Source: Octopus bimaculoides (lineage: Eukaryota). Taken from it: a stretch of DNA of 37,810 nucleotides. Of the stretch, positions 5,666 through 29,590 are shown one piece after another. The notes beneath the pieces are model-generated. The model made no database searches. It was not told the DNA's origin and was given only the letters and a program-made list of their open reading frames with translations. The first letter of the stretch is position 1. Every line of letters begins with the position of its first letter. The translations under genes were made by a program, and so were the position numbers. The DNA lies in NCBI RefSeq assembly GCF_001194135.2, contig NC_068997.1, positions 19,037,443 to 19,075,252 on the forward strand, written 5' to 3'.

Positions 5666-5753
5666 GGTAAATTTTCAGATTAACACCTGCACGCTAAAAC
5701 CCTAACCCTAACACCCTAGTGAAAATCGTGCAGGTGTTAATCTGAAAATTTAC

Positions 5754-5754
<1 letters not shown>
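5666..5754. mobile_element. 89-bp MITE with perfect 28-bp TIRs beginning GGTAA (Merlin-like termini) and internal CCCTAACCCTAA
   Basis: GGTAAATTTTCAGATTAACACCTGCACG (5666-5693) is the exact reverse complement of 5727-5754. Flanks are tatatata and tgtatata. Confidence 0.8.
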
Positions 5755-5812
<58 letters not shown>

Positions 5813-6737
5813 NNNNNNNNNNNNNNNNNNNNNNNNNNNNNNNNNNNNNNNNNNNNNNNNNNNNNNNNNNNNNNNNNNNNNNNNNNNNNNNNNNNNNNNN
5901 NNNNNNNNNNNNNNNNNNNNNNNNNNNNNNNNNNNNNNNNNNNNNNNNNNNNNNNNNNNNNNNNNNNNNNNNNNNNNNNNNNNNNNNNNNNNNNNNNNNN
6001 NNNNNNNNNNNNNNNNNNNNNNNNNNNNNNNNNNNNNNNNNNNNNNNNNNNNNNNNNNNNNNNNNNNNNNNNNNNNNNNNNNNNNNNNNNNNNNNNNNNN
6101 NNNNNNNNNNNNNNNNNNNNNNNNNNNNNNNNNNNNNNNNNNNNNNNNNNNNNNNNNNNNNNNNNNNNNNNNNNNNNNNNNNNNNNNNNNNNNNNNNNNN
6201 NNNNNNNNNNNNNNNNNNNNNNNNNNNNNNNNNNNNNNNNNNNNNNNNNNNNNNNNNNNNNNNNNNNNNNNNNNNNNNNNNNNNNNNNNNNNNNNNNNNN
6301 NNNNNNNNAGAGAGAGAGAGAGAGAGAGAGAGATGTGTATTCTAGTTTTCACATCATATAATCAATGAAAACAAGCATTACTATCATGCAAGTGATATGT
6401 TGTTTTTAATCTTACCCCTAAATGACAAGCCTTGTGCCAAAATTTAAAATCATTTTTATTCTTTCCTACGACAAGATGTTGACAACCAAAATTATTGAGA
6501 AATATATCTTCATCAAATTTGTAATTGATAAACATATGAAGGATTCGTTGATTTCCCGGTTTGCAATGAAATTTAATGAAATAATACGGAACTAACACCC
6601 TGTAATACAAAATGTGACAAAAGCTCTGCATGTAAGCAATACGAAACTAACACTACTAAAACAAATATTCCATATAAACACATTGCTTGTACTTTACGCA
6701 TTAATTATTTGTTTTATAAAACTTGACTTTTTCAAAA

Positions 6738-7437
6738 ATGGTTGATCCTGCCGGACAAGCAGACCCAACGGCAATATGCAGTGATGTCATGAATGACCAA
6801 GAAATTCGACAAGAAACATGGAAATTCTTTGATCTAATCCCACAAACTAATACAGAGGAGGTAGCAATTACATGGTTAGCCAAACACCGGCTAATTAGCA
6901 ATTCCGTGAAGTGTCCCACCTGTAGCAATTTATGTACACTGGTCGATCATCCAGAAGATATTGACGGAAAGAGATGGAAATGTGATCTGGACTCCTTCAC
7001 TCAGTCAGTCCGCAACGGATCGATTTTTGAGGATAGTGACGTCTCACTGACAACATTTATATGGCTTATGTATATGTGGTCAAGAGAGCATCTAAATTCT
7101 GAAATAGCTCACGAGACAAAAGTCAATGTAAACACTATCGATGATTTGTGTCAGTATATCCGAGAATTATTGGAAGGATTCTTAGAAGACCATCCGACTG
7201 AGTTAGGTGACGACCCACCGGAGATAGGTGGTTTCGATTCACAAACTGGTAAACCAAAAGTCGTCGAAATAGATGTAACCACAATTTCCAAACCTAAACC
7301 TAACGGGAAAAAACATGTGAAAGGATATAAGGTTTTTGGAGGAATTGAACGAGGAAGTGAAAAATGTTTTCTAGTGCCAATTGAACATCGAAATAAAGAC
7401 GCTTTCGAAGCTGCAATTGTTCGTTGGGTTTTGCCAG
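6738..7437 (+). CDS. Exon 1 of a Merlin/IS1595 (ISXO2-like) transposase-derived gene
   Basis: Open frame from ATG 6738: CPTC...DGKRWKC...SVRNGSIF Zn-ribbon region, HTH-like segment, IGG...VVEID and VFGGIERGSEKCFLVPIEHRNKDAFEAAIVRWVLPG, all typical of Merlin/IS1595 transposases. Donor CCAG|gtatga at 7437/7438, phase 1. Confidence 0.85.
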
Positions 7438-8396
7438 GTATGATTTAATAAAATTCCACATTTCGACTTTCATGTAGAATAATCGGAAATTGTCGAGTAC
7501 ATAAAAAAACTCCGTTTTTTTTGGGTTTTTTTTTACTAATTGATGTTTTAAGAATCGGAGATAATGGCTCCACACACAAAAGAGAGAATTATTTTGCCAA
7601 CCCCGTCTTTCCTGTTTTTTTTCAATCTTTCCTCCCCCCACTTTTTTTCTTCGAAATTCAAATTTAAAAGGTTACGCATATTTAAGTGGACTCTGTTGGA
7701 ATTTCCGAAAATTGTCCCCCACCCCCATTCCAAAACACTTTCACCGGAAATTTTTGTATATTCGGATTCTACATAGTAAATACTATATGCATAGAAAATT
7801 TCATTAAAAAATATTCATTTTTCTGAAAGTTATGACCTCCCAAAGTCTGGCGGGTAAAACCCTGTAGTTATGCCGGAATCATAATCCCAGATGTTTAAAG
7901 TCTGGAGAAAAAAAAAATCCAAAAGAAGTTCGAAAATGAAAAGTTACGGACAGGAAAAAGCCAAGAGGGTATCTTTTTACATCCGTCTTGTGAGACTAGT
8001 GCAGTAGTAAATCTTTACGGCAAAGGGACACGGAATTGGGGTGGAGGTAGGAGTAAAAATGTAAAAACGTCTTATTTTGGGATACAAAAATTCTACTGAA
8101 GGAAACAATCACCCAATTCCTTGTTCTTTTCCTTCTCCATGAGGTTACTATAGCTATTGCCGAAAGTCTATCAGAATCTGCTGACTGGTATAATAGTAAA
8201 AAATTACCGCCAAAAGTACCCACCCTCCTTTTTTTTATTTTATTATTAATTTATTTACTGAAGAATAGTATTTTACAATACGTGAAACTCATCCGAAGAA
8301 AGTAGTTTTGGACAAACTGGATAATTTCCGATTCTATTCTAGAGAAATGTCTCCTATTTTCCTATTTCGCCTGAAACGAAATATTGTGTTTATATA

Positions 8397-9237
8397 GGGG
8401 TGGGTGGGGCAAAATGAGGTGTTTTTACTGCATTTTTGACTTTGGAGATAAAATATTTTTTACAAATATTCAATACCTTTCAAAACTATATTAGCTAAGC
8501 ATTATAACATAATCTGATCACTGTTTCAGGAAATTATCGCCGTTCTTTTAAAGCATATAAAAGGCAAATTTGGCTGGGGCAAAATGAGTAAGTCAAGATA
8601 AATTAAATTTGCTGCTTCAATTCTCCAGGATACAGACTCATACACATGATTATCCATCCTTAGACATCAGAAATGCAACAAAAAATTAAAATATGCAGGT
8701 AAAATAAAAGATAATCAGGGAAAAATAGCACATGATATGAAATCAATGGAACTCAATAAAAAAAAAAAAAACTCAACATAAAATATTCTCTGTAGTGTCT
8801 TCATGATCTGCTGGAGTGTCTTCTTTGTGATATATTTACACACCATGAAGTTAAAGAGAAGAAATTATTGAAATTCGTCATTACTCATTTTAGACATTTT
8901 TGAAACTTGAAAATTATCAAATTCAATATTAGTGTGGGAAAAATTGACTTGGAATCCTATAGAGAAAAGAATATTGATTGCTAAGCACCAAGTATTTTCC
9001 AGATATTTTGTTAGCAATCTCAATTACAATCAGGTCAAAGTTGAAAATTTTCTTGAAAAAAGTGGACCTGCTACCTACTATGTTTTGGATTTGAACAACA
9101 ACTATGCTGACCAATTTTTACTCGTAAATATAATATAAAATACAAAACGATGATTCATTATTTGCAATCTAATGATTTTAGACTAGTAGGGAAAAAATAA
9201 AAATAAACCAGAAATTACTCATTTTGTCTCACCCACC
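8397..9237. mobile_element. Decayed DNA transposon with imperfect ~21-bp TIRs (GGTGGGTGGGGCAAAATGAG), superfamily uncertain
   Basis: 8399-8419 matches the reverse complement of 9217-9237 at 18/21; an internal sub-terminal copy lies at about 8570-8590; residual ORF 8932-9138 (VKVENFLEKSGPATYY) may be a transposase C-terminal remnant. Confidence 0.5.
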
Positions 9238-9456
9238 AAACCTCTAATCACTAGAAGTCCTAAAATTTGAAAACCTAACTCTGTCTTGGACAGGTTTTGA
9301 CATGAGTTGTGGACAGCAACTGTCAATGTGTTTTGTTGTTTGCTTAGAAACTTTTTTGCATTCTTTTGATAGCCATACATGAAAAGTGAAAGTCTATCTG
9401 CAGCAATTTCTGTAAAAAATTTCTATTTTTTAAATTTTCTGAATTGCTTGTGTATA

Positions 9457-10627
9457 CAGGGTGTCCCAGAAACATTTACCCATTGATATTTCTTAATCAT
9501 TCAAAATAAACTTAAGGTAGGATAATGAAATTTGGCACATGCGTTCTAATGTAAATTGTCAATCCATTGCAGTAATTACATTTCAAAATGACCACCTTTC
9601 TCCTTGATCATTGCCTGCAAACAGTGGTCATTAACTTGCAAGAGTGCCATACCACCTCTTCAGTCAACTTGACCCATGAAGACAGGTCTTTCTTCAGATC
9701 TGACACATTTGAATAGGAGTGAGCAGAAAGATTTCTAAGGTGGACCAAATAGCAAAGTCCATGGGATTGATGTCTGGACTTGAGGGAGGCCATATCGTCT
9801 TGTCTCAAAGACCACTGAAATTCTCTTTGCATGACCTCTATGTCAAATTGGATGTGTGGGCCGGAGCCCCATCTTGAGTGAGGATGTAATGGTCACCAAA
9901 GGTTTCTGTAACACAGGGTAACACTCTCATTCAACATTTCCACATAAACTTCACTGTTGACTTTGACACTAGCATTGATGAAGATCAAGGGAGACTTGAA
10001 CCCATCAGATGCAACTGCGCCCTACACCATGAGTGAAGCTGTCTTCTGACAGCGTAAATGATTCCTGCTATCTTCAGGCAAGTTTCTTGCATTACATGCA
10101 TAAAGCCTATCATTCTGCCTGTTGGTAACTGCCTCCATGGTGAAGATCCTCTCGTCAGACCAGATCAACACTTTGTTAGTGGTGCACTTCATCTCAGCTA
10201 ACATGGTTTTACCCCTATCAAGCTGTTTCTTCTTGGGAGCTGCTGAAATTAACTACTGGGATTGTTTCTTGTATGCAGTTAACTTTAAATCTTCTTTAAA
10301 AATCCTGTGCGTTGATGATTTCAAAATATCAAGAGCTTTTGCAGGGATTTCAGTTCATTTGCTTCTTCACAGCTTCAACAATTTGTGTGGTACAAACTGA
10401 TTGTTTCCTACTAGGAGTTGGCTTGCTAAAGGTAGTAGCAGACTCCATATATTGTTTCCAGGTATTGACCACTGCTTTATGGCACACATTGAACTGTCTT
10501 GTGTCCTTGTTGCTCACTCTGGTTGTTTTCAAAGCGACAATCTGGTCACGTTTTGCAATAATTTTGCCTGAACCGATATTCCTTAGGAAGAGTTTTAAAC
10601 ATGGGTAAATCTTTCTGGGGCACCCTG
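9457..10627 (-). mobile_element. Tc1/mariner element (DD37D/maT-like), full length but decayed
   Basis: TIRs CAGGGTGYCCCAGAAASATTTACCCA at both ends, TA on both flanks; minus-strand fragments LIWSDERIFTMEAVTNRQNDR and WPPSSPDINPMDFAIWSTLE, broken by stops and frameshifts. Confidence 0.9.
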
Positions 10628-10686
10628 TATATGTATGTGTTTATGTGTGTGTATGTAACTATATGTATGTGTTTCTGTGGATATTA

Positions 10687-11500
10687 TAAGGCGATATCAA
10701 AAAGTTCCTGGACTAGTTATGTTTGATGAAAAAAATCACTAATTTGCCTAAGTTTTAACATCATCTCCTTCAAAATAGTCCCTTTGCACAGCAATACACC
10801 AGTCCCAGCATTCCTGCCACTTTTGAAATCTGGCCTGGGAGTTGTTTTCTGTAAGCAAGTTGAGGACCTTTTGCAATTCGCTCTGGATCTCAACAGTGGT
10901 GTTAAAATGGTGACTTTTGACCAGTGTTTTCATATTGGGGAAGAGATGAAAGTCCGCAAGTGCTAAATCTAGCAAATAGAGTAGGTGCAGAAGCGATACA
11001 ATGTTGTTTTTGGTGAGAAACTCATGAGTGAGGAGAGCTTGGGGACAGGGTACATTGTCATTGAAGAATCCAATTCTTCATGCTCCATGGATCCAGTTGT
11101 TTTTGCTGACTGTCCTCCCTCAGATGCTTCAAAACGTTGCAGTATAAGTTTCAATTGATGGGTTTGGCCCTGGGGGATGAATTTTCAATGCACACTAGCA
11201 CATTTCTTGGGGGTGATGCTTGTGGCAGGTCTTCCAGGGACATTCTTCTGCTTTTGAAGCACCTGTGCCACTCGAAACATTGCATATGACTCTTTGCCTC
11301 ATCGCTGTAAGCTTGCCAAAGCATGCTCAATACCTCTGTAGCAGACTTCCTAAGTTTAATGCAAAATTTCACGTTGGCTCTTTGTTCCTGTCCACAACAA
11401 AATCGCAGACTACAGCATACATGTGATCACAAAAACACAAATTTCACTACTTGCGAAGTAAACACAGCAATGTCACTCAGATAGTGAATATTGTCACAGA
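10687..11500 (-). mobile_element. mariner (DD34D, Mos1/SETMAR-like) remnant
   Basis: One TIR (..atatcaaaaagttcctggact); fragments KFCIKLRKSATEVLSMLWQAY...QCFEWHRCFKS and DLALADFHLFPNMK...FQKWQECWDWCIAVQRDYFEGD. Internally deleted; second TIR not seen. Confidence 0.85.
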
Positions 11501-12124
11501 AATTGCTGAAGAAAGACTTTTACTTTTCATGTATGGCTATCAAAACGATGTTTTTTTTGTATATGAATTCAGCAACTGGACATGTTAGCCTCCAATTTGG
11601 CTTATAAATCATCTATGCTCACTGATAAATAGCAACACAAAATCAGGTTTTATAATTATTTATCTTTCTTTTTGTTACTGATTGTTGATTAGAGTGTTAC
11701 TTGTCATATTGACAGGTAATTATGGAAGTATGCTTTTTCCACAATGGGTATGCCAGGAAAAATTTAGAAATGGAATATTAATTTTTAAAAGAATGATATT
11801 TATTACCTTAATTAAATTTACAACAGTTCTCATATTTGCAATAAATATATGCTTTTATCAATATAGTTGCAATCTAGTCCATTGAAAACCTACCTCTGCA
11901 AAATTTCATTTTAAAAAACATGTATTTTTCTGAGTTAAACATTAAAGTTGCAGGACACTTGTCCTGCATCTTTTATTGTTAACTTGCTGTTTTATCTTAT
12001 ATTATCTTTCTCCACCTCTTATGTTATATAAAGTGTAACTGGAGAAATCAACCAACCAACTGGCCAACATCTATATCGGTTATTATTATCTAGAGATGAC
12101 AAAATATCTTTATTTTTATTGTAG

Positions 12125-12417
12125 GTACTCACATTGTGTCAGGTGTTTGGGCTGAATACCTTCAAATTAGCCAAATCCAACAAGGCATATATACTCACGA
12201 CTATATAAATCAAATTGAAAGAGATTCAGAAAATCAAACCAGTGATATTGACAGGATGTGGCTTAGAGTCAAGGGAAAATTGCGCCGGAAACATGTAACT
12301 AGTGACAAAGCTGTATTTCAATCTCTCTTAGCTGAATTTATTTGGCGGTCTCATTTTAAGAATGATAATAAATTTGCTGCTTTAATTTACTGTATCACAC
12401 ATTTATATAAAGTATAA
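12125..12417 (+). CDS. Exon 2 (terminal) of the Merlin-transposase-derived gene
   Basis: Acceptor tctttatttttattgtag|GT at 12124/12125 restores phase 1 to give LPG-THIVSGVWAEY...YTHDYINQ...IDRMWLRVKGKLRRKH...LLAEFIWRSH...FAALIYCITHLYKV*, the expected Merlin C-terminal half. AATAAA at 12416-12421 overlaps the stop. Confidence 0.85.
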
Positions 12418-12664
12418 TAAAACATATTTTGTACATTTGTTTGTTCTGTTATTGTTAAATTCATCATTGTTTAATGTTCACTTTTCCATGTTTGCATGGG
12501 TCAATTGAAATTTGTTGAGACAGATTTTCTATGGCTGGATGCCCTTCTTGTTGGCAAATGTCACTGGTTTCCAAGTAAGGTAATACTTCCCATGACCAGA
12601 TATGGTTTTGATAGAAGACTGGCTTATTTACAACTGTCATGTGATGTCAAGACAAGACTATACA

Positions 12665-12705
<41 letters not shown>

Positions 12706-13142
12706 NNNNNNNNNNNNNNNNNNNNNNNNNNNNNNNNNNNNNNNNNNNNNNNNNNNNNNNNNNNNNNNNNNNNNNNNNNNNNNNNNNNNNNNNNNNNNNN
12801 NNNNNNNNNNNNNNNNNNNNNNNNNNNNNNNNNNNNNNNNNNNNNNNNNNNNNNNNNNNNNNNNNNNNNNNNNNNNNNNNNNNNNNNNNNNNNNNNNNNN
12901 NNNNNNNNNNNNNNNNNNNNNNNNNNNNNNNNNNNNNNNNNNNNNNNNNNNNNNNNNNNNNNNNNNNNNNNNNNNNNNNNNNNNNNNNNNNNNNNNNNNN
13001 NNNNNNNNNNNNNNNNNNNNNNNNNNNNNNNNNNNNNNNNNNNNNNNNNNNNNNNNNNNNNNNNNNNNNNNNNNNNNNNNNNNNNNNNNNNNNNNNNNNN
13101 NNNNNNNNNNNNNNNNNNNNNNNNNNNNNNNNNNNNNNNNNN

Positions 13143-15060
13143 GGTAGAAAATGCGAAAATAATTTTATCATGAAGAACATTTTAGTACCGGTTTCAGTCT
13201 TTGCGACTTTTTCAACTTAGAGTAAAGCATGAAAAACAATTAAATTGTGGAAAAATTAAATGAAATAATTTAAAAAAAATATTTCCATAGTTTTCAAATG
13301 CAAGGGACATTTTCCTTTTTTCTGTCTGTCTGTCTCTCTTTTTTACTCATTTGAGTTCTAGGTAGCGGGCAGCAGGTAGTAGTAGTCCTAATATTTGATA
13401 TGAATTCTTGTTTTTGATTGTTTAAGCAGCAGTAGTAGTTGAGAAAGGAAGTGGTGAAGAAGAAGAGAAAGAATAATAAAAATGCAGGAGTGGTATGACA
13501 GTAGTAGGATGTTGGTGGAATCCTCTTAAATGGTCAAGTGACCCATTGTGGTTGGAATTGTTCTGAATAAATTCATGACTTGTGACTGTTCTGAATATAT
13601 TATTTTTAATATTTGTGTGGGTATTATTCTAAGGCCCTTGTAATAGTGTCATTTATGATGGACGCATTCAAAAGCAGTTTATATTTTGTGATAAAGTATG
13701 ACTCTACTAATGTGCTACCTACAGGTTACATCGTCCCTGAATTGATAGAAGGGAAAAATTCTGAAGCTGAGTTGTTTGTTATTGGTGCAAATGTCGATGT
13801 GTTCGCTGAATGCTATTTTTCTGTATTTCCAAAATTTTGATCTGGGATCTATGCAGAGTGATCCTTTGATGTAGGCTGTTTTTGGTTTGGCCTATGTATT
13901 GCTCTCGACACCCAGAACAAATTAATACATATATCAGGTTCTCTGAAGCACGTGAAGTTGCTTTTCACTGTTTAAAAGAGAACTCTGATCCCTCAATTAG
14001 GTTGACGCATATACCACAGTTGGGTCTTCTGCATTTTTTTACATTGTTGTCGAGCGCATTCAGACTTGTATGAAGAGACTTATAGATTTGGGCTGTATTT
14101 TGCTCTTTATAATGGTGTGCATTTGGAGGATTAAATTCATTCTATGGTCCATTTTTAGTAGGGGAATGTTCTGGAGGAGGATGGTGTTGAAGGCTTCATT
14201 GTTAAGAGGGTTGTGTGTAGAGATGTATGGTAGGGCTTTTGGTTGTAAATCCTTCTTTAATTTGGGATGCCTGAGTTCATGGATGTTGAGTTGTAGGGTA
14301 TGTTGACAGCATATATCAATTAGTGATGGTGGGTAGTTCCTGGTAATGATTGTATCCTTTAGTTCATGTAGTCGTGTGTCCCTGGTGCTTATATTAGAAA
14401 CTCTAGTACAAATCCTTTTTGCTAGGTTGAAAGAGATATTCATTCTAGTGTGTCTGAGGTGGCATGAGTTGAACAGTAGATATTGCTTGGAGTCTGTGGG
14501 CTTATAGTATATATCTGTTTCTATTTATTTGTTAGATTTCTTAATGAGGATGTTGAGGAATGGAAGTTGTTGACGGCTATATTCCATCGTGAATTGAATG
14601 TTTACATCAAGTCCATTTATAAGTGCTTGAAACTCTCTAAGTCTCTCTGTACTTTCATGCCAACAAATGAAACAGTCATCCAGATACCTCTTCCAGTTAT
14701 TTTCTATGTAGAGGGAGAATGGATTGCTGTTTTTTTCTAGTACCTTACAATAAAGACTGATTCCTAGATATTCCATGACTAGGTTAGCAAAGGAGGGAGC
14801 CATTCTCATACCCATCACTGTCCCTGATTTTTGTCAATAGAAGTTGTCTTTGAAGACAAAGTAGTTATTCTCCAAGATGAATATTAGCCCTTCTGTTACA
14901 AATTCTTTTTTGATGCGATGTGGGAATACATTGGTGTAATTCTCTAGACAGAATTGAATTGCCTCTATTCCTAGGCTGTGGGGGATATTAGAATAGAGGT
15001 TGACTACATCAAAGGATACTAGTAGGGTGTTTTTGCACATTTTTTATAGTTTACTTTTTC
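13143..15060 (-). mobile_element. Penelope-like retroelement (RT + GIY-YIG endonuclease), decayed
   Basis: Minus-strand fragments LVSFDVVNLYSNIP, GMRMAPSFANL, WKRYLDDCFICW, QFTMEYS..LPFL, FNLAKRICT and LIYVLICSGCREQYIGQT; A/purine-rich 3' region ending in a hammerhead-like pLTR motif near 13183-13220. Confidence 0.9.
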
Positions 15061-16057
15061 TTAAAGAAACATTCAATGCCCCTTCCTCCTCCTCGCCCGC
15101 CCATCGCTTACCAGCTTTCAAAAAGTTAAAATCTCCCAATCTTTCACTTTTGGCTGATGTTTCCCACATGCATAGAATTCTACAGAAATAGTAGGCTTAA
15201 AAATACTAGACCACCACCAGAAAACCTGACATGCTAGAAACAACAGGTAAAAGACATTATTTCTGAAGAAACATCCCTGCATTCCAAACAGCTAAAATTG
15301 AAACATTGGGAGTGTGTAGCTTTTTGAAAGTGGTGAGGTGATGGGTAAAATTCTTAAGAATTTATACTCTCTGTTTTTTCTCCATGTATTACCAAGAATA
15401 AAAATTTGAAAAAAGTAAAAAATGAATTTGGTGTGGAGAGGGAGAAAATTCAAATATTGAAAACATTTTGTGGGTGAAATCCTAATCTCCTGTATCTCAA
15501 AAATAATATAAATCTGTATGAAGGATTTAAGTCAGGTCGCTATGTGTTAGTAGTGATACTGGTAAACAATGTAGACTGGTATTACCTGCAGCATTCTGAA
15601 GAATAAAAAAATAATGTTGTGTGAAAGAAGAGGAAAAAAAATCTCAAAATGGGGAGGTGTTGTGACAGACACTCCCAAGTAAGAAGTGGGTTGTTCCACT
15701 ACTGATAAATACTGATAAATAGTGGACAGACACAGCAAGCAGGGTCAGTTGGCAAGGTACGACATATGGGCCAGTCATGCAGATGACAAAATACATTGTT
15801 ATAATGCGGGACATATCAAACATTGAACCAATTACATTTAGAACCAGTAACATTGGTGACTTACCACTAAATTGGTGACTACCAATTCATTAAAGTAGGA
15901 TTTGAACTCAGGACATGAGAAAATTAGACTGAAGCACCAAATCTGATTGAAATAAGGGAGAGGACTGACCTGCCATCAGGTATATGTTTATCTGTACTAG
16001 TGCATGACCTGTTATTTTATGTAGAGATTAAGCAATATTTTGCTTCATTGAAATATA

Positions 16058-17362
16058 CAGGGGTTGGACAAAATAATGGAAGCACTTTAAAATTTCAAAC
16101 AAATTTATTTTAATATGGAGTAGGACTGCCTTTGGCAGTAACTACAGCTTGAATTCTATGAGGTATGGACTCGTACAAAGTTTGAATTGTTTCCAAAGGA
16201 ATTTTTGTCCATTCTTCAGCTAAAACAGTCTCCAGTTCTTGTAGTGATGATGTTGGAGGATATCGACTCCTTACTTGTTTTTCTAAAATGCACCATAAAT
16301 GTTCAATAATATTGAGATCTGGGNNNNNNNNNNNNNNNNNNNNNNNNNNNNNNNNNNNNNNNNNNNNNNNNNNNNNNNNNNNNNNNNNNNNNNNNNNNNN
16401 NNNNNNNNNNNNNNNNNNNNNNNNNNNNNNNNNNNNNNNNNNNNNNNNNNNNNNNNNNNNNNNNNNNNNNNNNNNTGAATAGTTCTGCAACCATAGGATG
16501 AATTTGATCAGATAAAATGCTTAAATAGTCTTGATTATTAATTCTGCCATGAAGGGAAACCATTGGGCTGGTGGATTTCCAAGATATAGCCTCCCAGATC
16601 ATCACAGATCTTCCTCCATGTTTAACAGTTGGAAGAAGGCAGTTTGGGTCAAATGCTGCTTTTGGCTGTCTCCACATGTATACTCAGCCGGTAGTCGGAA
16701 CTAGGGTAAAGGATGACTTGTATGAGAAAATAACACTCTTTCACTGCTCTAGGGACCAATTCTGTAGGTTTTTACTCCACTCTAAACGCTTTGCAATGTT
16801 TGTTTTTGAAAGTAGTAGTTTTCTGATTGCAGCCCTCTCGTGAAATCTGGCTTTGTGCAGCCCCTGGCAAACAGTTTTTTGGAAACTGGATTCTCGAGGT
16901 GGTCATTAAGCTCTGCAGTAATTTTGGGAGCTGTACTTTTGTGATCTTTTCTAACAATTCGCGTAAGAGTCTGATGGTCCCTATCTGAAAGTTTTGGTTT
17001 TCTTCCAGAGTTTTGTTTCGATGAGGAGGTTTTTCCTTCTTTCTCAAAGGCTGTCATTACTTTCAAGACAGTACTTCTTGATACACCAAACATTTTGGCT
17101 GTTTCTTTACGCTAGTGCCTGCAATACGAGCACCAACAAATTTGACCTCTTTGAAAGTCCGATAGATCTGTCATTTTAATGAATTTTAATTACCTTTTTC
17201 TGATGATATCTGAAAAGAAACATCAATTTTAGCAAAACATATTAAGCAACACTAATAATAAATCAAAAAATATAAAAATAAACAAGCTTTTGATGGTTTT
17301 ATAGATATTCAAAATTACGATGCTATGATGCTAGGCGTTTTCATTATTTTGTCCAACCCCTG
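16058..17362 (-). mobile_element. Tc1-family (DD34E) transposon, near full length, frameshifted
   Basis: 21-bp TIRs CAGGGGTTGGACAAAATAATG; left flank TA, right flank TC; fragments FGVSRSTV...SGRKPKLSDRD, PTVKHGGRSVMIW, PDLNIIEHLW...IQAVVTAKGSPTPY. Confidence 0.92.
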
Positions 17363-24477: not shown

Positions 24478-25925
24478 GTGTAGGAGGATGCTCTAAAAGC
24501 ATAGTTGCTAGAATAAGAATCAGCTGGGCAAAGTTCAGAGAAGTATTACTTTTTCTGGTCAAAGAACCTCTCCTTCAGAGTGAAAGGCACATTGTATAAT
24601 CCCTGTATAAGAACAACTATATATTGGGTCATCTCATAAATAACGTGGTTTTTTCAATTGCTTTAACTAAAAGTCGAAGGGATAAATTAATTGCATCAAC
24701 TTGCTATAAAATCAAGTTGTAATTTTACCTTGTACTTATTCTTAGTGCACATTTTGAAAAGTGCAGTTCAATTTTAACAGTTATTTTCCCAAAGCTATAA
24801 TAGAAGTGACAAAGGAGCATATCCAGTATATTTTATTTTATGAGTTCAATAAAGGCAACAATGAAAATGGAAAGTACAAGGAATATTAATGCAGCATATG
24901 GGGATCGGACGATAAGCATAAGCCAGTGTCAATGGTGGTTCCAGAAATTCCGAGCTGGAAACTGCAGCCTAGAAGACGAGCCTCATCCTCGAAGATCTGT
25001 AGAGCTTGATGAGGACATTCTGCAAACCCTGGTGGAACAAGATCTCATTGTAACCATTGAGGAGCTAGCAGAGAAGCTTGCATTTGGTTATTAAACCATT
25101 CATTGACACCTGCACTAGAAGAAAAATGACCATCTTTGGTTTCAAGATGAAAGGTGTTCTTCCATCAGGATCATGCTCACCCACAAACAGCAAGGATGAC
25201 ATTTCAAAGGCTGGAGCAATTTGAATGGGAAACGATGCCCCACCCACAATATTTGCTGGACATTGTCCCATCTGATTATTATTTATTCTGTTGTCTTCAA
25301 AATCATTTGGACAGAAAAAATATGAATTCTGTGGACAAGGTCAGAACAGTACTGGGGGAATATTTTTCCACACAGACAAGTGAATTTTGGAAGAGAGACC
25401 TTGCAAGTCTAAAAGATAGATAGAAGAGCATTGTAGAAAAATATATTTTAGATTAAAAAAGAACTTTGTTTATCTTAATTTTGAAAAATAAAAGAAGTAT
25501 TAAAAAAAATGGCATTATTTATGGGATGACCTAATAAATGGTAGTGAAACAAGGGCTGTGACTACAAAGGACATACGAAGGCTTTAAAGAAATGCAGTCA
25601 GCATGCTCCAATGTGAGTGTGCATGTACAAATAAGGGCAAATGTTTTAAGAGAAAAATTGAGTATAAGAGGCATTAGATGTAGTGTGCAAGTGAGAAGAT
25701 TGCGCTGGTTTGGTCATGTGATGCATATGGATGAGGACAGCTGCATAAAGAAGAACTGATCTCTAAATGTGGATGGAACGTGTGGAAGAGAGAGACTTAA
25801 GAAGGCATGAGATGAAACAGTGAAAAATGATCTTCAGATATTCAGCCTCACAAGGGAGATGACAAAACACAAAGATGATAGGCAATTTGTTGTGCTTGAG
25901 AAGACTTGTTCAGCTGAGTAAATTC
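24478..25925 (+). mobile_element. RTE LINE 3' fragment (24478-24623 + 25535-25925) split by a mariner insertion
   Basis: GGCSKSIVARIRISWAKFRE before the insertion continues into NGSET-AV...RLRWFGHVMHMDEDSCIK...GTCGR after it. Confidence 0.8.
24624..25534 (+). mobile_element. mariner (DD34D) element, 911 bp, internally deleted
   Basis: 22-bp TIRs (19/22 match, TTRGGTCATCYCATAAATAAYG), TA on both flanks; fragments TRNINAAYGDRTIS...WFQKFRAGNCSLEDEPHP and FHQDHAHPQTA...HPQYLLDIVPSDYYLF. Confidence 0.92.
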
Positions 25926-28679: not shown

Positions 28680-29590
28680 TTAATTAGATTAGGATTGTCC
28701 TTAAGTTTAAAAATTTCATAAATTTCCATAGAGCACAGTCCACAGCCGTATCTACTATTTCTATAGGGTTGTGCCCTCCTGATGATTTCCCATTTAAGGG
28801 TAAAATAGGCACGTTTTTCAATCCTTTAATGATAATCATTATTTTCAACACTTTCCCCGCAGCATTAACACACAACACAGCAGTAAAACGAGCTTTGGTA
28901 ACACCACAGTGACTTGCATCTACATTTTTATTGTCAACAAAGTCTACGGTTGTTGAACTCAACATGTCAACATATACAGGTGTTTCATCCATATTATAAA
29001 TCTGGTCAGCATCCTTATCTGCTGTTAATACTGGAATGCTATCTTGATGGTCACTGGCGATTTGTGCCTTTTCTCCAAGTGTTTTATTGTCTGCTTGACC
29101 AACATGTGTAATCTTTCTTACAGTCAGTTAATTCCATTTCATGAAATTGAAAATCCATTTATCAGAACATCTAAAGCTGTTCATTTCAATTCCAAACCTT
29201 TTTACCAATTCAAAAGTATATTCCTGTAAACGGCGATAATTTACAATTATATTGTTTGCACACCGAACAACAATCCACTGTAAGAGTTCAATCTCTAGAT
29301 CTCTATGCGCTGGTCCTCTACCTCCACCAATTGATCTGTGCCTCCTCTTGTCTGACAAATTGATTAACTCAGTTTCTTTTGTGCACCATTCTCTCAATTG
29401 TTTTCTATCAATACCTAAGTCTCTTGATGCAGCTGATAAATTGCCAGAATGTTCTTTCACTCATTTAATAGCACTCAATTTTTCACTAATGGTATATGAT
29501 CATTGAACATGTTTTGATATATTTTCTTTCAGCTCCATTTTGGGAATAAAAATCCTTTGAATTTATCTACAGATGTATTTACTCCACCAA
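28680..29590 (-). mobile_element. pogo-family (POGK-like) transposon remnant
   Basis: Brinker/CENP-B HTH-like segment (GNLSAASRDLGIDRKQLREW...LEIELLQWI...FRCSDKWIFNFM) and DDE_1 start (MDETPVYVDM...RFTAVLCVNAAGKVL); TA|CAGTAAATTTTGG terminus at about 29580; 3' end truncated. Confidence 0.85.

What the first reader, a model, noticed from the sequence alone, without database searches (positions are those of the whole stretch)
6738..12417. Intron-containing, apparently domesticated Merlin/IS1595 transposase gene
Seen in sequence: two ORFs 4.7 kb apart join through canonical phase-1 GT/AG sites (CCAG|gtatga ... ttgtag|GT) into one uninterrupted 330-aa protein. It covers the whole Merlin transposase from Zn ribbon to the C-terminal LAEFIWR helix, has a poly(A) signal at the stop, and has no TIRs or TSD bracketing it. 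Established knowledge: Merlin is a eukaryotic DNA-transposon superfamily related to bacterial IS1016/IS1595, and autonomous copies are compact and TIR-bounded. Inference: both exons stayed open while the transposase remnants inside the intron decayed, which points to purifying selection on a host gene. Merlin domestications are rarely reported and I do not recall one from cephalopods.
Basis: partly seen in the sequence, partly recalled or inferred. Interest (0 to 1): 0.88.

Follow-up and report, generated by a model that had tools for sequence, protein, structure and literature searches.

The report
Octopus gene domesticated from Merlin transposase
This is a real two-exon Octopus bimaculoides gene (already annotated as uncharacterized LOC106879382) that descends from a Merlin "jumping gene" enzyme, has lost a catalytic residue, and is kept intact by natural selection as one of about eight such genes in octopuses, which probably now bind DNA and no longer cut it.

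Summary
Exon 1 (6738-7437) and exon 2 (12125-12417) join through a phase-1 GT/AG intron into a 330-aa protein. That protein is identical to RefSeq XP_014784396.1 (O. bimaculoides LOC106879382, uncharacterized).

The domestication reading is supported.
- **Orthology:** the locus is collinear with O. sinensis LOC115214311 and has the same intron and the same intronic transposon debris.
- **Constraint:** exons differ by 2.5% with no indels. Intron and flanks differ by 7.5% with 44 indels. dN/dS is 0.24 (p = 5e-4). Exon 1 of a third octopod gives 0.20.
- **No transposon ends:** no terminal inverted repeats bracket the gene.

It is not single-copy. It belongs to an Octopus family of eight paralogous lineages, 59-66% identical to this protein and partly in tandem. 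All sampled members have the same intron, and seven lineages have orthologues 90-98% identical between species. Three lineages each lost a different catalytic acid; this one reads D179-G240-D276.

A motif, AATACGAAACTAACAC, lies 32-221 nt upstream of the ATG in eight of nine lineages.

The most likely function, which is inferred, is a non-catalytic DNA-binding regulator. The gene model and Merlin homology were already public. The domestication, the family structure and the motif appear unreported.

The parts
6583..6598 (+). Upstream motif copy A (AATACGGAACTAACAC), 155 nt before the ATG
   Evidence: It has one mismatch to the family motif. The same position is occupied in O. sinensis (L001 9847) and in a third octopod (L004 82).
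6638..6654 (+). Upstream motif copy B (AATACGAAACTAACACT), 100 nt before the ATG. Candidate shared cis-regulatory element of the family.
   Evidence: It is identical in three species. The core 10-mer ATACGAAACT was found 13 times in about 118 kb of fetched loci, always 45-221 nt upstream of a family ATG (my estimate of the chance expectation is about 0.3). Later loci added further upstream copies. There is no counterpart downstream of any stop codon.
6738..7437 (+). Coding exon 1 (aa 1-233 plus the first base of Gly234). It encodes the N-terminal helices, a putative Cys-rich zinc ribbon (C59, C62, C66, C82), a helical linker, and the first half of the RNase H-like core with D179 (7272-7274).
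   Evidence: The ORF is intact in O. sinensis and in a third octopod.
7438..12124 (+). Phase-1 GT...AG intron, 4687 nt
   Evidence: The same intron position and phase occur in all seven other gene models reconstructed, representing three paralogous lineages plus the O. sinensis orthologue. Intron lengths range from 2.5 to 8.4 kb.
9359..11550 (-). Decayed mariner-type element inside the intron, with 65-nt inverted repeats at 9359-9423 and 11486-11550. A second element is nested within it, with 31-nt inverted repeats at 9453-9483 and 10601-10631.
   Evidence: One search gives the inverted repeats. One search gives a weak HTH_48 (Mos1) hit at 11154-11426, below the Pfam cut-off. Window 9508-12667, which covers most of this element, is collinear with O. 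sinensis.
12125..12417 (+). Coding exon 2 (aa 234-330 plus the stop). It encodes the second half of the RNase H-like core. G240 (12142-12144) replaces the second catalytic Asp, and D276 (12250-12252) replaces the catalytic Glu. The C-terminal helices follow.
12416..12421 (+). AATAAA hexamer overlapping the stop codon; possible poly(A) signal
   Evidence: The hexamer and 60 nt after it are conserved in O. sinensis. Its use as a poly(A) signal was not tested.

Best explanation
The region encodes O. bimaculoides LOC106879382, a host gene derived from a Merlin (IS1595-like) DDE transposase.

Shown:
- It is a two-exon gene at an orthologous, collinear position in at least two Octopus species. Its exon 1 is also present in a third octopod.
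- It evolves under purifying selection.
- No transposon ends are detectable.
- It belongs to an Octopus family of eight or nine paralogous lineages. All sampled members share the same phase-1 intron, and most share a promoter-proximal motif.
- The full transposase architecture is retained and predicted to fold confidently.
- The catalytic triad reads D179-G240-D276 instead of D-D-E. Two sister lineages have lost a different acidic residue, and one of those (the 048 lineage) was tested and is strongly constrained.

Inferred:
- The protein can no longer cut or join DNA.
- It is retained for a non-catalytic role, most likely sequence-specific DNA binding through its N-terminal helix / zinc-ribbon module. 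It would act as a transcriptional regulator or as a repressor of related Merlin elements.
- The conserved core would serve as an oligomerisation or interaction scaffold.
- The upstream motif AATACGAAACTAACAC co-regulates the family, and may be bound by the proteins themselves.

My confidence is about 0.85 that this is a selected host gene of transposase origin, and about 0.45 for the specific DNA-binding, non-catalytic mechanism.
For: **Identity**
- The protein is an exact match to XP_014784396.1.

**Homology**
- PF12762 scores 32 bits against a cut-off of 27.
- There is a full-length alignment to canonical transposases of about 328 aa.
- The AlphaFold2 model has pLDDT 83 and pTM 0.81. Its best PDB matches are retroviral integrase catalytic cores.

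**Orthology**
- Window 6313-15401 is collinear with O. sinensis L001 9594-23057, including the intron and most of its mariner debris.

**Selection**
- The CDS has 25 differences in 993 nt and no indels.
- The 4850 aligned non-coding nt have 363 differences and 44 indel events (Fisher p = 3e-10; P of no indel = 1e-4).
- dN/dS is 0.235 (p = 4.6e-4). Two paralogue-orthologue pairs give 0.114 and 0.065.
- Exon 1 of a third octopod gives 0.20, with the donor site conserved.

**Family**
- There are eight lineages, and seven have Obi/Osi(/Ovu) orthologues at 90-98% amino-acid identity.
- The phase-1 intron after LPG is the same in every gene model reconstructed.

**Catalytic decay**
- EIDESK has become EIDVTT, and three residues are deleted from the VxHxxxFVDP block across the family.
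- The catalytic Glu is Asp in most lineages.
- D2 is Gly in this lineage, D1 is Gly in the LOC106879048 lineage, and the third acid is Asn or Ser in the LOC106868237 lineage.
- HMM scores are lower than for canonical relatives.

**No terminal inverted repeats**
- The best inverted match scores 22 bits, against a shuffled mean of 21.6. The same holds for five paralogue loci.

**Motif**
Against: - No transcript evidence could be examined. No Logan contig encoded a spliced product, and the only Logan relatives read through into the intron.
- Of the three orthologue pairs tested, this gene has the highest dN/dS (0.235), so constraint on it may be partly relaxed.
- DNA binding, zinc binding and loss of catalysis are all inferred. 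No Pfam zinc-ribbon model matches. The fourth Cys of the canonical ribbon is Asp here and His in most paralogues.
- O. bimaculoides carries many other Merlin-like sequences (191 annotated, PMC8101967). A genome-wide census of decayed copies of this particular family could not be made.
- Orthologues outside the octopods were not found, but unannotated cephalopod genomes could not be searched.
Confidence: 0.8

Rival explanations
1. The gene is domesticated, but the family is still a nuclease or recombinase system. Paralogues that keep three acidic residues (D-D-D) would cut DNA. The window protein (D-G-D) would be a non-catalytic partner or regulator within a hetero-oligomer.
For: Five of eight lineages keep Asp at all three catalytic positions. 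The catalytic core (aa 196-255) and the C-terminus are the most conserved parts among paralogues, with 0.77-0.92 pairwise identity, more than the zinc-ribbon loops. The RNase H-like fold is predicted with confidence.
Against: The blocks around the first Asp (DESK to DVTT) and before the third acid (a three-residue deletion) are altered in all family members. Three lineages lost an acidic residue, and the one of them that was tested remains strongly constrained (omega 0.11 in the D1-to-Gly lineage). So catalysis is not what selection preserves in at least those lineages.
Confidence: 0.12
2. It is an old, immobile Merlin copy that is drifting neutrally, and its reading frame is still open by chance.
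For: There are no terminal repeats, a catalytic residue is lost, and the intron is full of other transposon debris.
Against: Exon divergence is one third of the neighbouring non-coding divergence. There are no indels where about 9 are expected. dN/dS is 0.20-0.24 in two independent comparisons. Seven of the eight lineages remain intact and 90-98% identical between O. bimaculoides and O. sinensis/vulgaris.
Confidence: 0.03
3. It is a member of a still-active, intron-containing autonomous Merlin transposon family. Conservation would then reflect selection for transposition.
For: Several paralogues share the intron. O. bimaculoides is rich in Merlin-like sequences (PMC8101967).
Against: The comparisons made are between orthologous, collinear loci, where a resident transposon copy would evolve neutrally. 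The closest paralogue is only 66% identical. No terminal repeats were found at six loci. Several genes sit in tandem clusters. Introns are 2.5-8.4 kb and filled with other elements. This copy lacks the second catalytic Asp.
Confidence: 0.03
4. The two exons are conserved for a reason other than this protein, for example an unrecognised overlapping feature, and the spliced mRNA is not made.
Against: The pattern of change is codon-aware: 13 synonymous against 12 non-synonymous differences over 206 against 784 sites. Splice sites are conserved in all species and paralogues examined. Two separate public annotations, NCBI RefSeq and the UniProt entry for O. bimaculoides, carry the identical model. 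O. sinensis paralogues carry several RefSeq isoforms.
Confidence: 0.02

Closest known systems
Merlin / IS1595 (IS1016, ISXO2-like) DDE transposases
   Same: There is full-length homology at about 35% identity to canonical eukaryotic Merlin transposases of the same length. The DDE_Tnp_IS1595 domain scores above the Pfam cut-off. The N-terminal Cys-rich module and the RNase H-like core are shared.
   Different: The catalytic triad is D-G-D rather than D-D-E. There are no terminal inverted repeats or target-site duplication. The locus is fixed and orthologous between species. A 4.7-kb intron is present, whereas the nearest canonical relatives are single uninterrupted ORFs on 1.3-5 kb contigs. The NCBIfam IS1595 score (37) is below its cut-off (75), while canonical relatives pass (78-101).
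Putative Merlin domestications proposed in protists (Stentor, Perkinsela, Bodo saltans; PMC8101967)
   Same: These are Merlin-related ORFs preserved without terminal repeats or target duplications. Some show synteny between species, and some lack the DDE motif.
   Different: Those cases are in protists and were proposed from ORF preservation. In the passages I read, no dN/dS or family analysis was given. Here the host is an animal, selection is quantified at orthologous loci, and the gene has expanded into an intron-bearing family. The same paper lists this octopus protein only as one of 191 Merlin hits.
Transposase-derived host gene families such as FHY3/FAR1 and MUSTANG (Mutator-derived, plants), PGBD1-5 (piggyBac-derived) and CENP-B/TIGD/JRK (pogo-derived)
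   Same: This comparison rests on my own knowledge, not on a test here. In each, a whole transposase ORF is retained as a host gene, terminal repeats are lost, paralogues have expanded under purifying selection, catalytic residues are often mutated, and the DNA-binding domain is reused. FHY3/FAR1 bind a defined promoter motif.
   Different: They come from different transposon superfamilies. For the octopus family, no binding site, expression pattern or phenotype is known. The upstream motif is only a candidate.

Membership tests
Merlin/IS1595 transposase superfamily (protein homology) | DDE_Tnp_IS1595 (PF12762) domain above the gathering score | tested here: met
   32 bits against a cut-off of 27, aa 197-309. 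Paralogues score 32-44 bits and canonical relatives 60-76 bits.
Merlin/IS1595 transposase superfamily (protein homology) | NCBIfam NF033547 IS1595 family transposase above its cut-off (a model built for bacterial proteins) | tested here: not met
   36.9 bits against a cut-off of 75. Canonical eukaryotic relatives P0018 and P0012 pass with 101 and 78 bits.
Functional Merlin transposon (mobile element) | Intact D-D-E catalytic triad | tested here: not met
   The triad reads D179, G240, D276. The alignment with 16 canonical relatives shows EIDES / ISDGW / HTQNIExxW at these positions.
Functional Merlin transposon (mobile element) | Terminal inverted repeats (starting GG) and an 8-9 bp target-site duplication bracketing the ORF | tested here: not met
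   There is no inverted match above the shuffled background within 2 kb on either side in the O. sinensis orthologous locus (22 bits against a mean of 21.6). The same holds at five paralogue loci. In the window itself, only 430 nt upstream and 290 nt downstream lie before assembly gaps.
Functional Merlin transposon (mobile element) | Multiple dispersed, near-identical copies | tested here: inconclusive
   Among annotated and predicted proteins, the closest paralogue is 66% identical, and the window holds no second copy. A tBLASTn of whole octopus genomes, which would find unannotated decayed copies, was not possible.
Domesticated transposase (host gene) | Orthologous, syntenic locus in different species | tested here: met
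   Window 6313-15401 is collinear with O. sinensis CM016865.1 (L001 9594-23057), with the same intron and shared intronic elements. The upstream side beyond 6313 is hidden by a gap.
Domesticated transposase (host gene) | Intact ORF and dN/dS significantly below 1 between orthologues | tested here: met
   dN/dS is 0.235 (Fisher p = 4.6e-4) against O. sinensis and 0.20 for exon 1 against a third octopod. The paralogue pairs give 0.114 and 0.065. The CDS has no indels where 9 are expected.
Domesticated transposase (host gene) | Transcription and correct splicing | not testable with these tools
   The only support is indirect: identical models in RefSeq and UniProt, and multiple RefSeq isoforms for paralogues. 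No spliced contig was found among the Logan-derived proteins.
Domesticated transposase (host gene) | A demonstrated host function | not testable with these tools
   No paper in the searchable library mentions these genes.

The most novel reading that the evidence does not exclude
Octopods carry a lineage-specific, self-regulating family of Merlin-derived DNA-binding proteins. In this reading, members recognise the conserved AATACGAAACTAACAC element in their own promoters, an element inherited from the ancestral transposon's 5' end. Catalytically dead members (D-G-D, G-D-D, D-D-N/S) and possibly active members (D-D-D) would work together, either as a transcription-factor network or as a host-controlled DNA-cutting or transposon-silencing system. 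This would be the first functional Merlin domestication described in an animal.
Probability: 0.15. Interest if true: 0.8.

Novelty: new member of a known kind. Interest (0 to 1): 0.5.

Why it matters
Transposase domestication is a recurrent source of new regulators and recombinases, with RAG1, CENP-B, PGBD5 and FHY3/FAR1 as known examples. The Merlin superfamily has so far contributed only tentative cases in protists. This locus gives a quantitatively supported animal case. It also comes with unusually informative features:
- an expanded family of eight conserved paralogous lineages;
- three independent losses of different catalytic residues, with strong constraint measured in one of those lineages (omega 0.11) and moderate constraint in the window lineage (0.235);
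- a shared, ancient promoter-proximal motif that gives an immediate binding-site hypothesis.

It also adds a lineage-restricted gene family to the short list of octopod-specific gene expansions. The gene models exist already, so the value lies in the interpretation and in the experiments it makes possible, not in a new kind of system.

Tried and rejected
1. **Terminal repeats around the gene.** I searched the window, the O. sinensis orthologous locus and five paralogue loci. Nothing rose above the shuffled background.
2. **Is the upstream motif one arm of an old terminal repeat?** No copy with up to 4 mismatches lies within 1 kb downstream of any stop codon, so it behaves as a 5'-only element.
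3. **Ends of the nearest canonical Merlin.** I fetched P0019 on freshwater-metagenome contigs L014-L019 to compare its ends with the motif. Only low-complexity A/T-rich inverted matches were found, and the motif was absent. This was uninformative.
4. **Spliced transcripts among Logan-derived proteins.** The relatives found (P0010, P0031, P0050, P0051) all read from exon 1 into the intron, so they are genomic or unspliced.
5. **Species of the third octopod.** I tried to identify it from its run accessions (SRR11869384, SRR11869391). No paper was found.
6. **Solved structures.** There is no sequence relative in the PDB. Fold search returns only generic retroviral-integrase cores.
7. **High-scoring long hits P0052 and P0053** (representative search). 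They turned out to be chimeric gene models that string together many canonical Merlin fragments. They are not closer relatives.
8. **Is the 'intron' a transposon insertion into an intronless ORF?** Rejected. The same phase-1 position is used in every gene model reconstructed, with unrelated intron content and lengths.
Full report

Yes, to the base.
- The window has an ATG at 6738 and an open frame to 7437. A donor CCAG|GTATGA follows.
- At 12124/12125 there is an acceptor TTGTAG|GT, and the frame runs to TAA at 12415-12417.
- The two pieces are 700 and 293 nt. They join in phase 1 into 993 nt, which is 330 codons plus the stop.
- The junction splits the Gly codon of the motif LPG|T. P233 and G234 are invariant in an alignment of 24 homologues, and nothing is missing or added at the join.
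- The spliced protein passes the Pfam gathering score for DDE_Tnp_IS1595 (32 bits against 27). It aligns over its whole length with canonical Merlin-type transposases of about 328 aa.
- An exact-sequence look-up shows the 330-aa product is XP_014784396.1, 'uncharacterized protein LOC106879382 [Octopus bimaculoides]'. In UniProt it is A0A0L8G3P2, 'ISXO2-like transposase domain-containing protein'.

**2. Surroundings**

- The window is 37% G+C, has ten assembly gaps and is full of transposon debris.
- Gaps at 5813-6308 and 12706-13142 leave only 430 nt upstream and 290 nt downstream of the gene. Any statement about terminal repeats made from the window alone is therefore weak.
- The intron (7438-12124) contains a mariner-type remnant bounded by 65-nt inverted repeats (9359-9423 and 11486-11550). 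A second element is nested in it, with 31-nt repeats at 9453-9483 and 10601-10631.
- That remnant gives a weak Mos1 HTH_48 match, below the Pfam cut-off.
- AATAAA overlaps the stop codon (12416-12421) and is conserved in O. sinensis. The hexamer occurs 1.4 times per kb here, so it proves little.

**3. Orthology and selection**

The closest protein is O. sinensis LOC115214311, at 97% identity and the same length. I fetched its locus as L001.

*Collinearity.* Window 6313-15401 is collinear with L001 9594-23057. This runs through the 5' flank, exon 1, the intron (including most of the mariner debris), exon 2, the 3' flank and 2 kb beyond. The O. sinensis gene has the same donor and acceptor sequences.

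*Divergence.* Exons and neighbouring non-coding DNA differ sharply between the two species.

| Region | Aligned nt | Substitutions | Indel events |
|---|---|---|---|
| Exons (CDS) | 993 | 25 (2.5%) | 0 |
| Intron and flanks | 4850 | 363 (7.5%) | 44 |

- About 74 substitutions and 9 indels would be expected in the CDS under neutrality. Fisher p = 3e-10 for substitutions, and the Poisson probability of no indel is 1e-4.
- Within the CDS there are 13 synonymous and 12 non-synonymous differences, over 206 and 784 sites. This gives dN/dS = 0.235 (p = 4.6e-4).
- dS (0.066) matches the non-coding divergence, so the deficit is specifically in amino-acid changes.

*A third species.* A more distant octopod, known only as Logan assemblies of runs SRR11869384 and SRR11869391, carries exon 1 with the same GTATGA donor.
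- It has no indels.
- dN = 0.050 and dS = 0.243, giving omega = 0.20.
- Its flanks are only 78-84% identical and contain indels.

These comparisons are between orthologous resident copies, where a transposon would drift neutrally. The constraint is therefore host-level.

**4. No transposon ends**

- In the O. sinensis locus, the best inverted match between the 2 kb upstream and the 2 kb downstream scores 22 bits. Shuffled sequence gives a mean of 21.6 and a maximum of 24.3.
- Five paralogue loci give the same negative result.

**5. A family, not a single gene**

Database searches and cluster look-ups show eight paralogous lineages in Octopus.

| Lineage | O. bimaculoides gene(s) | Arrangement |
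|---|---|---|
| Window | LOC106879382 | alone |
| 047, 048, 049 | LOC106879047, LOC106879048, LOC106879049 | clustered on CM046607.1 |
| 236, 237, 238 | LOC106868236, LOC106868237, LOC106868238 | tandem on CM046614.1 |
| 799 | LOC106877799 | alone |

- The other lineages are 59-66% identical to the window protein.
- In a neighbour-joining tree they form one clade on a long stem, separate from canonical Merlin transposases.
- Seven of the eight lineages contain O. bimaculoides plus O. sinensis and/or O. vulgaris orthologues, at 90-98% amino-acid identity.
- A ninth lineage (P0010) appears in the third octopod.
- I reconstructed seven further gene models, covering three paralogous lineages plus the O. 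sinensis orthologue. Every one has the same phase-1 intron after LPG. Intron lengths run from 2.5 to 8.4 kb, and splice-site sequences are conserved.
- Two more orthologue pairs give dN/dS = 0.114 (p = 8.5e-9) and 0.065 (p = 1e-13).

The nearest relatives outside the family are only about 35% identical. They lie as uninterrupted ORFs on short contigs. The exhaustive representative search shows nothing intermediate: P0006 scores 614 bits and the next genuine hit about 330 bits. The two long hits in between are chimeric gene models.

That is not what is seen. The copies are old and diverged, partly tandem, without terminal repeats, and seven of the eight lineages are conserved between species.

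**6. What has changed in the protein**

Canonical relatives carry three blocks: VVEIDESKFFHRKYHRG, I(I/V)SDGWxAY and VxHxxxFVDPxxxxHTQNIExxW. The table shows what the octopus family has at each.

| Feature | Canonical | Octopus family | Window lineage |
|---|---|---|---|
| Block 1 | EIDESK | EIDVTT | D179 kept |
| Block 2 | ISDGW | ISDIW | IVSGVW, so D2 is G240 |
| Block 3 | FVDP...NIExxW | three residues deleted; NID(R/K)MW in most lineages | D276 |
| Linker | absent | conserved 7-residue insertion (ELGDDPP) | present |

- The D2-to-Gly change is shared by the window gene and its O. sinensis orthologue.
- The LOC106879048 lineage instead has the first Asp replaced by Gly (VEVGMF).
- The LOC106868237 lineage has Asn or Ser at the third position.
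- So three lineages have each lost a different catalytic acid. The 048 lineage was tested and is under strong constraint (omega 0.11).
- Family HMM scores are correspondingly lower than for canonical relatives.

AlphaFold2, run on the 24-sequence alignment, gives a confident model (pLDDT 83, pTM 0.81). It has N-terminal helices, a three-stranded Cys-rich ribbon (aa 58-90), a helical linker, and a beta-beta-beta-alpha-beta RNase H-like core. Foldseek matches the core to retroviral integrase catalytic domains. No sequence relative has a solved structure.

The fourth Cys of the canonical ribbon is His in six lineages. It is Asp in the window and 048 lineages. No Pfam zinc-ribbon model matches, so zinc binding is an inference.

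**7. A shared upstream motif (not in the original finding)**

While comparing the 5' flanks of paralogues I found AATACGAAACTAACAC(T).
- In the window it occurs at 6638-6654 (exact) and at 6583-6598 (one mismatch).
- The same two sites occur in O. sinensis and in the third octopod.
- One or two copies, sometimes as an inverted pair 20-30 nt apart, lie 32-221 nt upstream of the ATG in the 047, 048, 049, 236, 237 and 238/LOC115219239 lineages and in the P0010 lineage.
- The core 10-mer ATACGAAACT was found 13 times in about 118 kb of fetched loci, always in that upstream position. Three further upstream copies appeared in the loci fetched later. From sequence length and composition, I estimate about 0.3 chance hits.
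- The rest of the 37.8-kb window has no other match with up to 3 mismatches.
- Only the 799 lineage lacks it.
- No inverted counterpart lies downstream of any stop codon. It therefore behaves as a promoter-proximal element and not as a relic terminal-repeat pair.

Its survival across paralogues whose other non-coding DNA is unalignable implies selection on a cis-element. Its function is unknown. Co-regulation of the family, or binding by the proteins themselves, is a hypothesis.

**8. How it most likely works**

*Shown:* this is a selected host gene of Merlin transposase origin, with the full architecture retained and a broken catalytic triad.

*Inferred:* two acidic residues cannot hold the two-metal centre of a DDE enzyme. 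The window protein is therefore most likely non-catalytic and kept for DNA binding or protein interaction. That is the usual fate of domesticated transposases, which become transcription factors, transposon repressors or chromatin proteins.

The main rival within domestication is that D-D-D paralogues still cut DNA and the dead members act as partners. The high conservation of the core among paralogues keeps this open.

The neutral-relic, active-transposon and not-expressed readings are each contradicted by several independent results, as set out in the rival explanations.

**9. Comparison with what is known**

- The protein is a homologue of Merlin/IS1595 transposases. The locus fails the tests for a mobile Merlin element: triad not met, ends not met.
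- It meets the testable criteria of a domesticated transposase: orthologous locus, intact ORF, omega below 1, and loss of ends.
- PMC8101967 surveyed Merlin across eukaryotes. It noted 191 hits in O. bimaculoides and lists XP_014784396.1, XP_014783956.1 and XP_014768888.1 in its supplement. It proposed domestication only for protist cases (Stentor, Perkinsela, Bodo).
- Full-text searches for these gene identifiers found no paper at all, and searches combining octopus or cephalopods with Merlin or domesticated transposases turned up no paper describing this family.
- In how it works, and from my own knowledge, it most resembles expanded transposase-derived regulator families such as FHY3/FAR1.

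**10. Verdict**

The gene was already annotated, it is a member of an eight-lineage family, and it is catalytically degenerate. This is a new member of a known kind, the domesticated DDE transposases, and apparently the first quantified Merlin case in an animal. Interest is moderate (0.5). The most useful outcomes are the family-level picture and the testable motif.

Noticed in passing
window 6583-6598 and 6638-6654; also L001 9847 and 9902, L002 1566/1603 and 9780, L003 5917/5956, L004 82/136, L006 2795, L010 246, L011 1431, L012 1416, L013 1430/1469: A conserved motif, AATACGAAACTAACAC, lies 32-221 nt upstream of the start codon in eight of nine paralogous lineages, sometimes as an inverted pair. 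It is absent elsewhere in the fetched loci and downstream of the genes. It is a candidate family-wide cis-regulatory site.
   Followed up: partly
Proteins P0004/P0039 (LOC106879048 lineage) and P0045/P0006/P0046 (LOC106868237 lineage): Two other lineages lost a different catalytic acid: the first Asp became Gly, and the third acid became Asn or Ser. The 048 lineage was tested and remains under strong purifying selection (omega 0.11).
   Followed up: yes
Protein alignment A2, around window residues C82-D85: The fourth Cys of the canonical CxxC...CxxC ribbon is His in six octopus lineages. It is Asp in the window and LOC106879048 lineages. Whether zinc is still bound is open.
   Followed up: no
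O. sinensis LOC115219239 isoforms (P0002, P0044, P0006); locus L003: RefSeq isoform X2 joins exon 1 of one tandem paralogue to exon 2 of the neighbouring one. Its N-terminus is identical to X3 and its C-terminus to X1. The shared intron position may therefore allow exon mixing between tandem genes, or the model may be an annotation artefact.
   Followed up: partly
O. vulgaris CAI9735743.1 (P0047): This gene model fuses the 799-lineage Merlin-derived N-terminus (up to the third catalytic block) to C2H2 zinc fingers. It could be a host-transposase fusion or a mis-joined model.
   Followed up: partly
L001 11065-12997 (O. sinensis intron): A roughly 2-kb insertion with 99-100% complementary inverted arms (201 and 387 nt) is present in the O. 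sinensis intron and absent from the window. It looks like a recent species-specific insertion or an assembly foldback.
   Followed up: no
window 14063-14833 (-), 16785-17111 (-), 24810-25420 (+), 28687-29460 (-): The rest of the window holds other decayed mobile-element ORFs: a reverse-transcriptase fragment, HTH fragments that look Tc1/mariner-like and Tc5/pogo-type, and a mariner-like piece. No other intact gene was recognised.
   Followed up: partly
window 5750-5812, 6309-6352, 12659-12705: Assembly gaps are bordered by dinucleotide microsatellites: TA repeats at 12659-12705 and simple repeats around the 5813-6308 gap (seen only as repetitive SL/YI translations). The gaps probably mark unresolved simple repeats and not large missing sequence.
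   Followed up: no
Protein P0059 (1656 aa, unknown organism): This long protein has three tandem Merlin-like modules whose catalytic blocks are degenerate (IEINVF, IHTKEW). It may be an independent domestication in another animal.
   Followed up: no
O. sinensis LOC115214512 isoform X4 (P0008) against O. bimaculoides LOC106879049 (P0005): No separate O. sinensis or O. vulgaris orthologue of LOC106879049 was found. An alternative, truncated exon 2 in LOC115214512 X4 resembles it, which hints at lineage-specific loss or decay of one family member.
   Followed up: no
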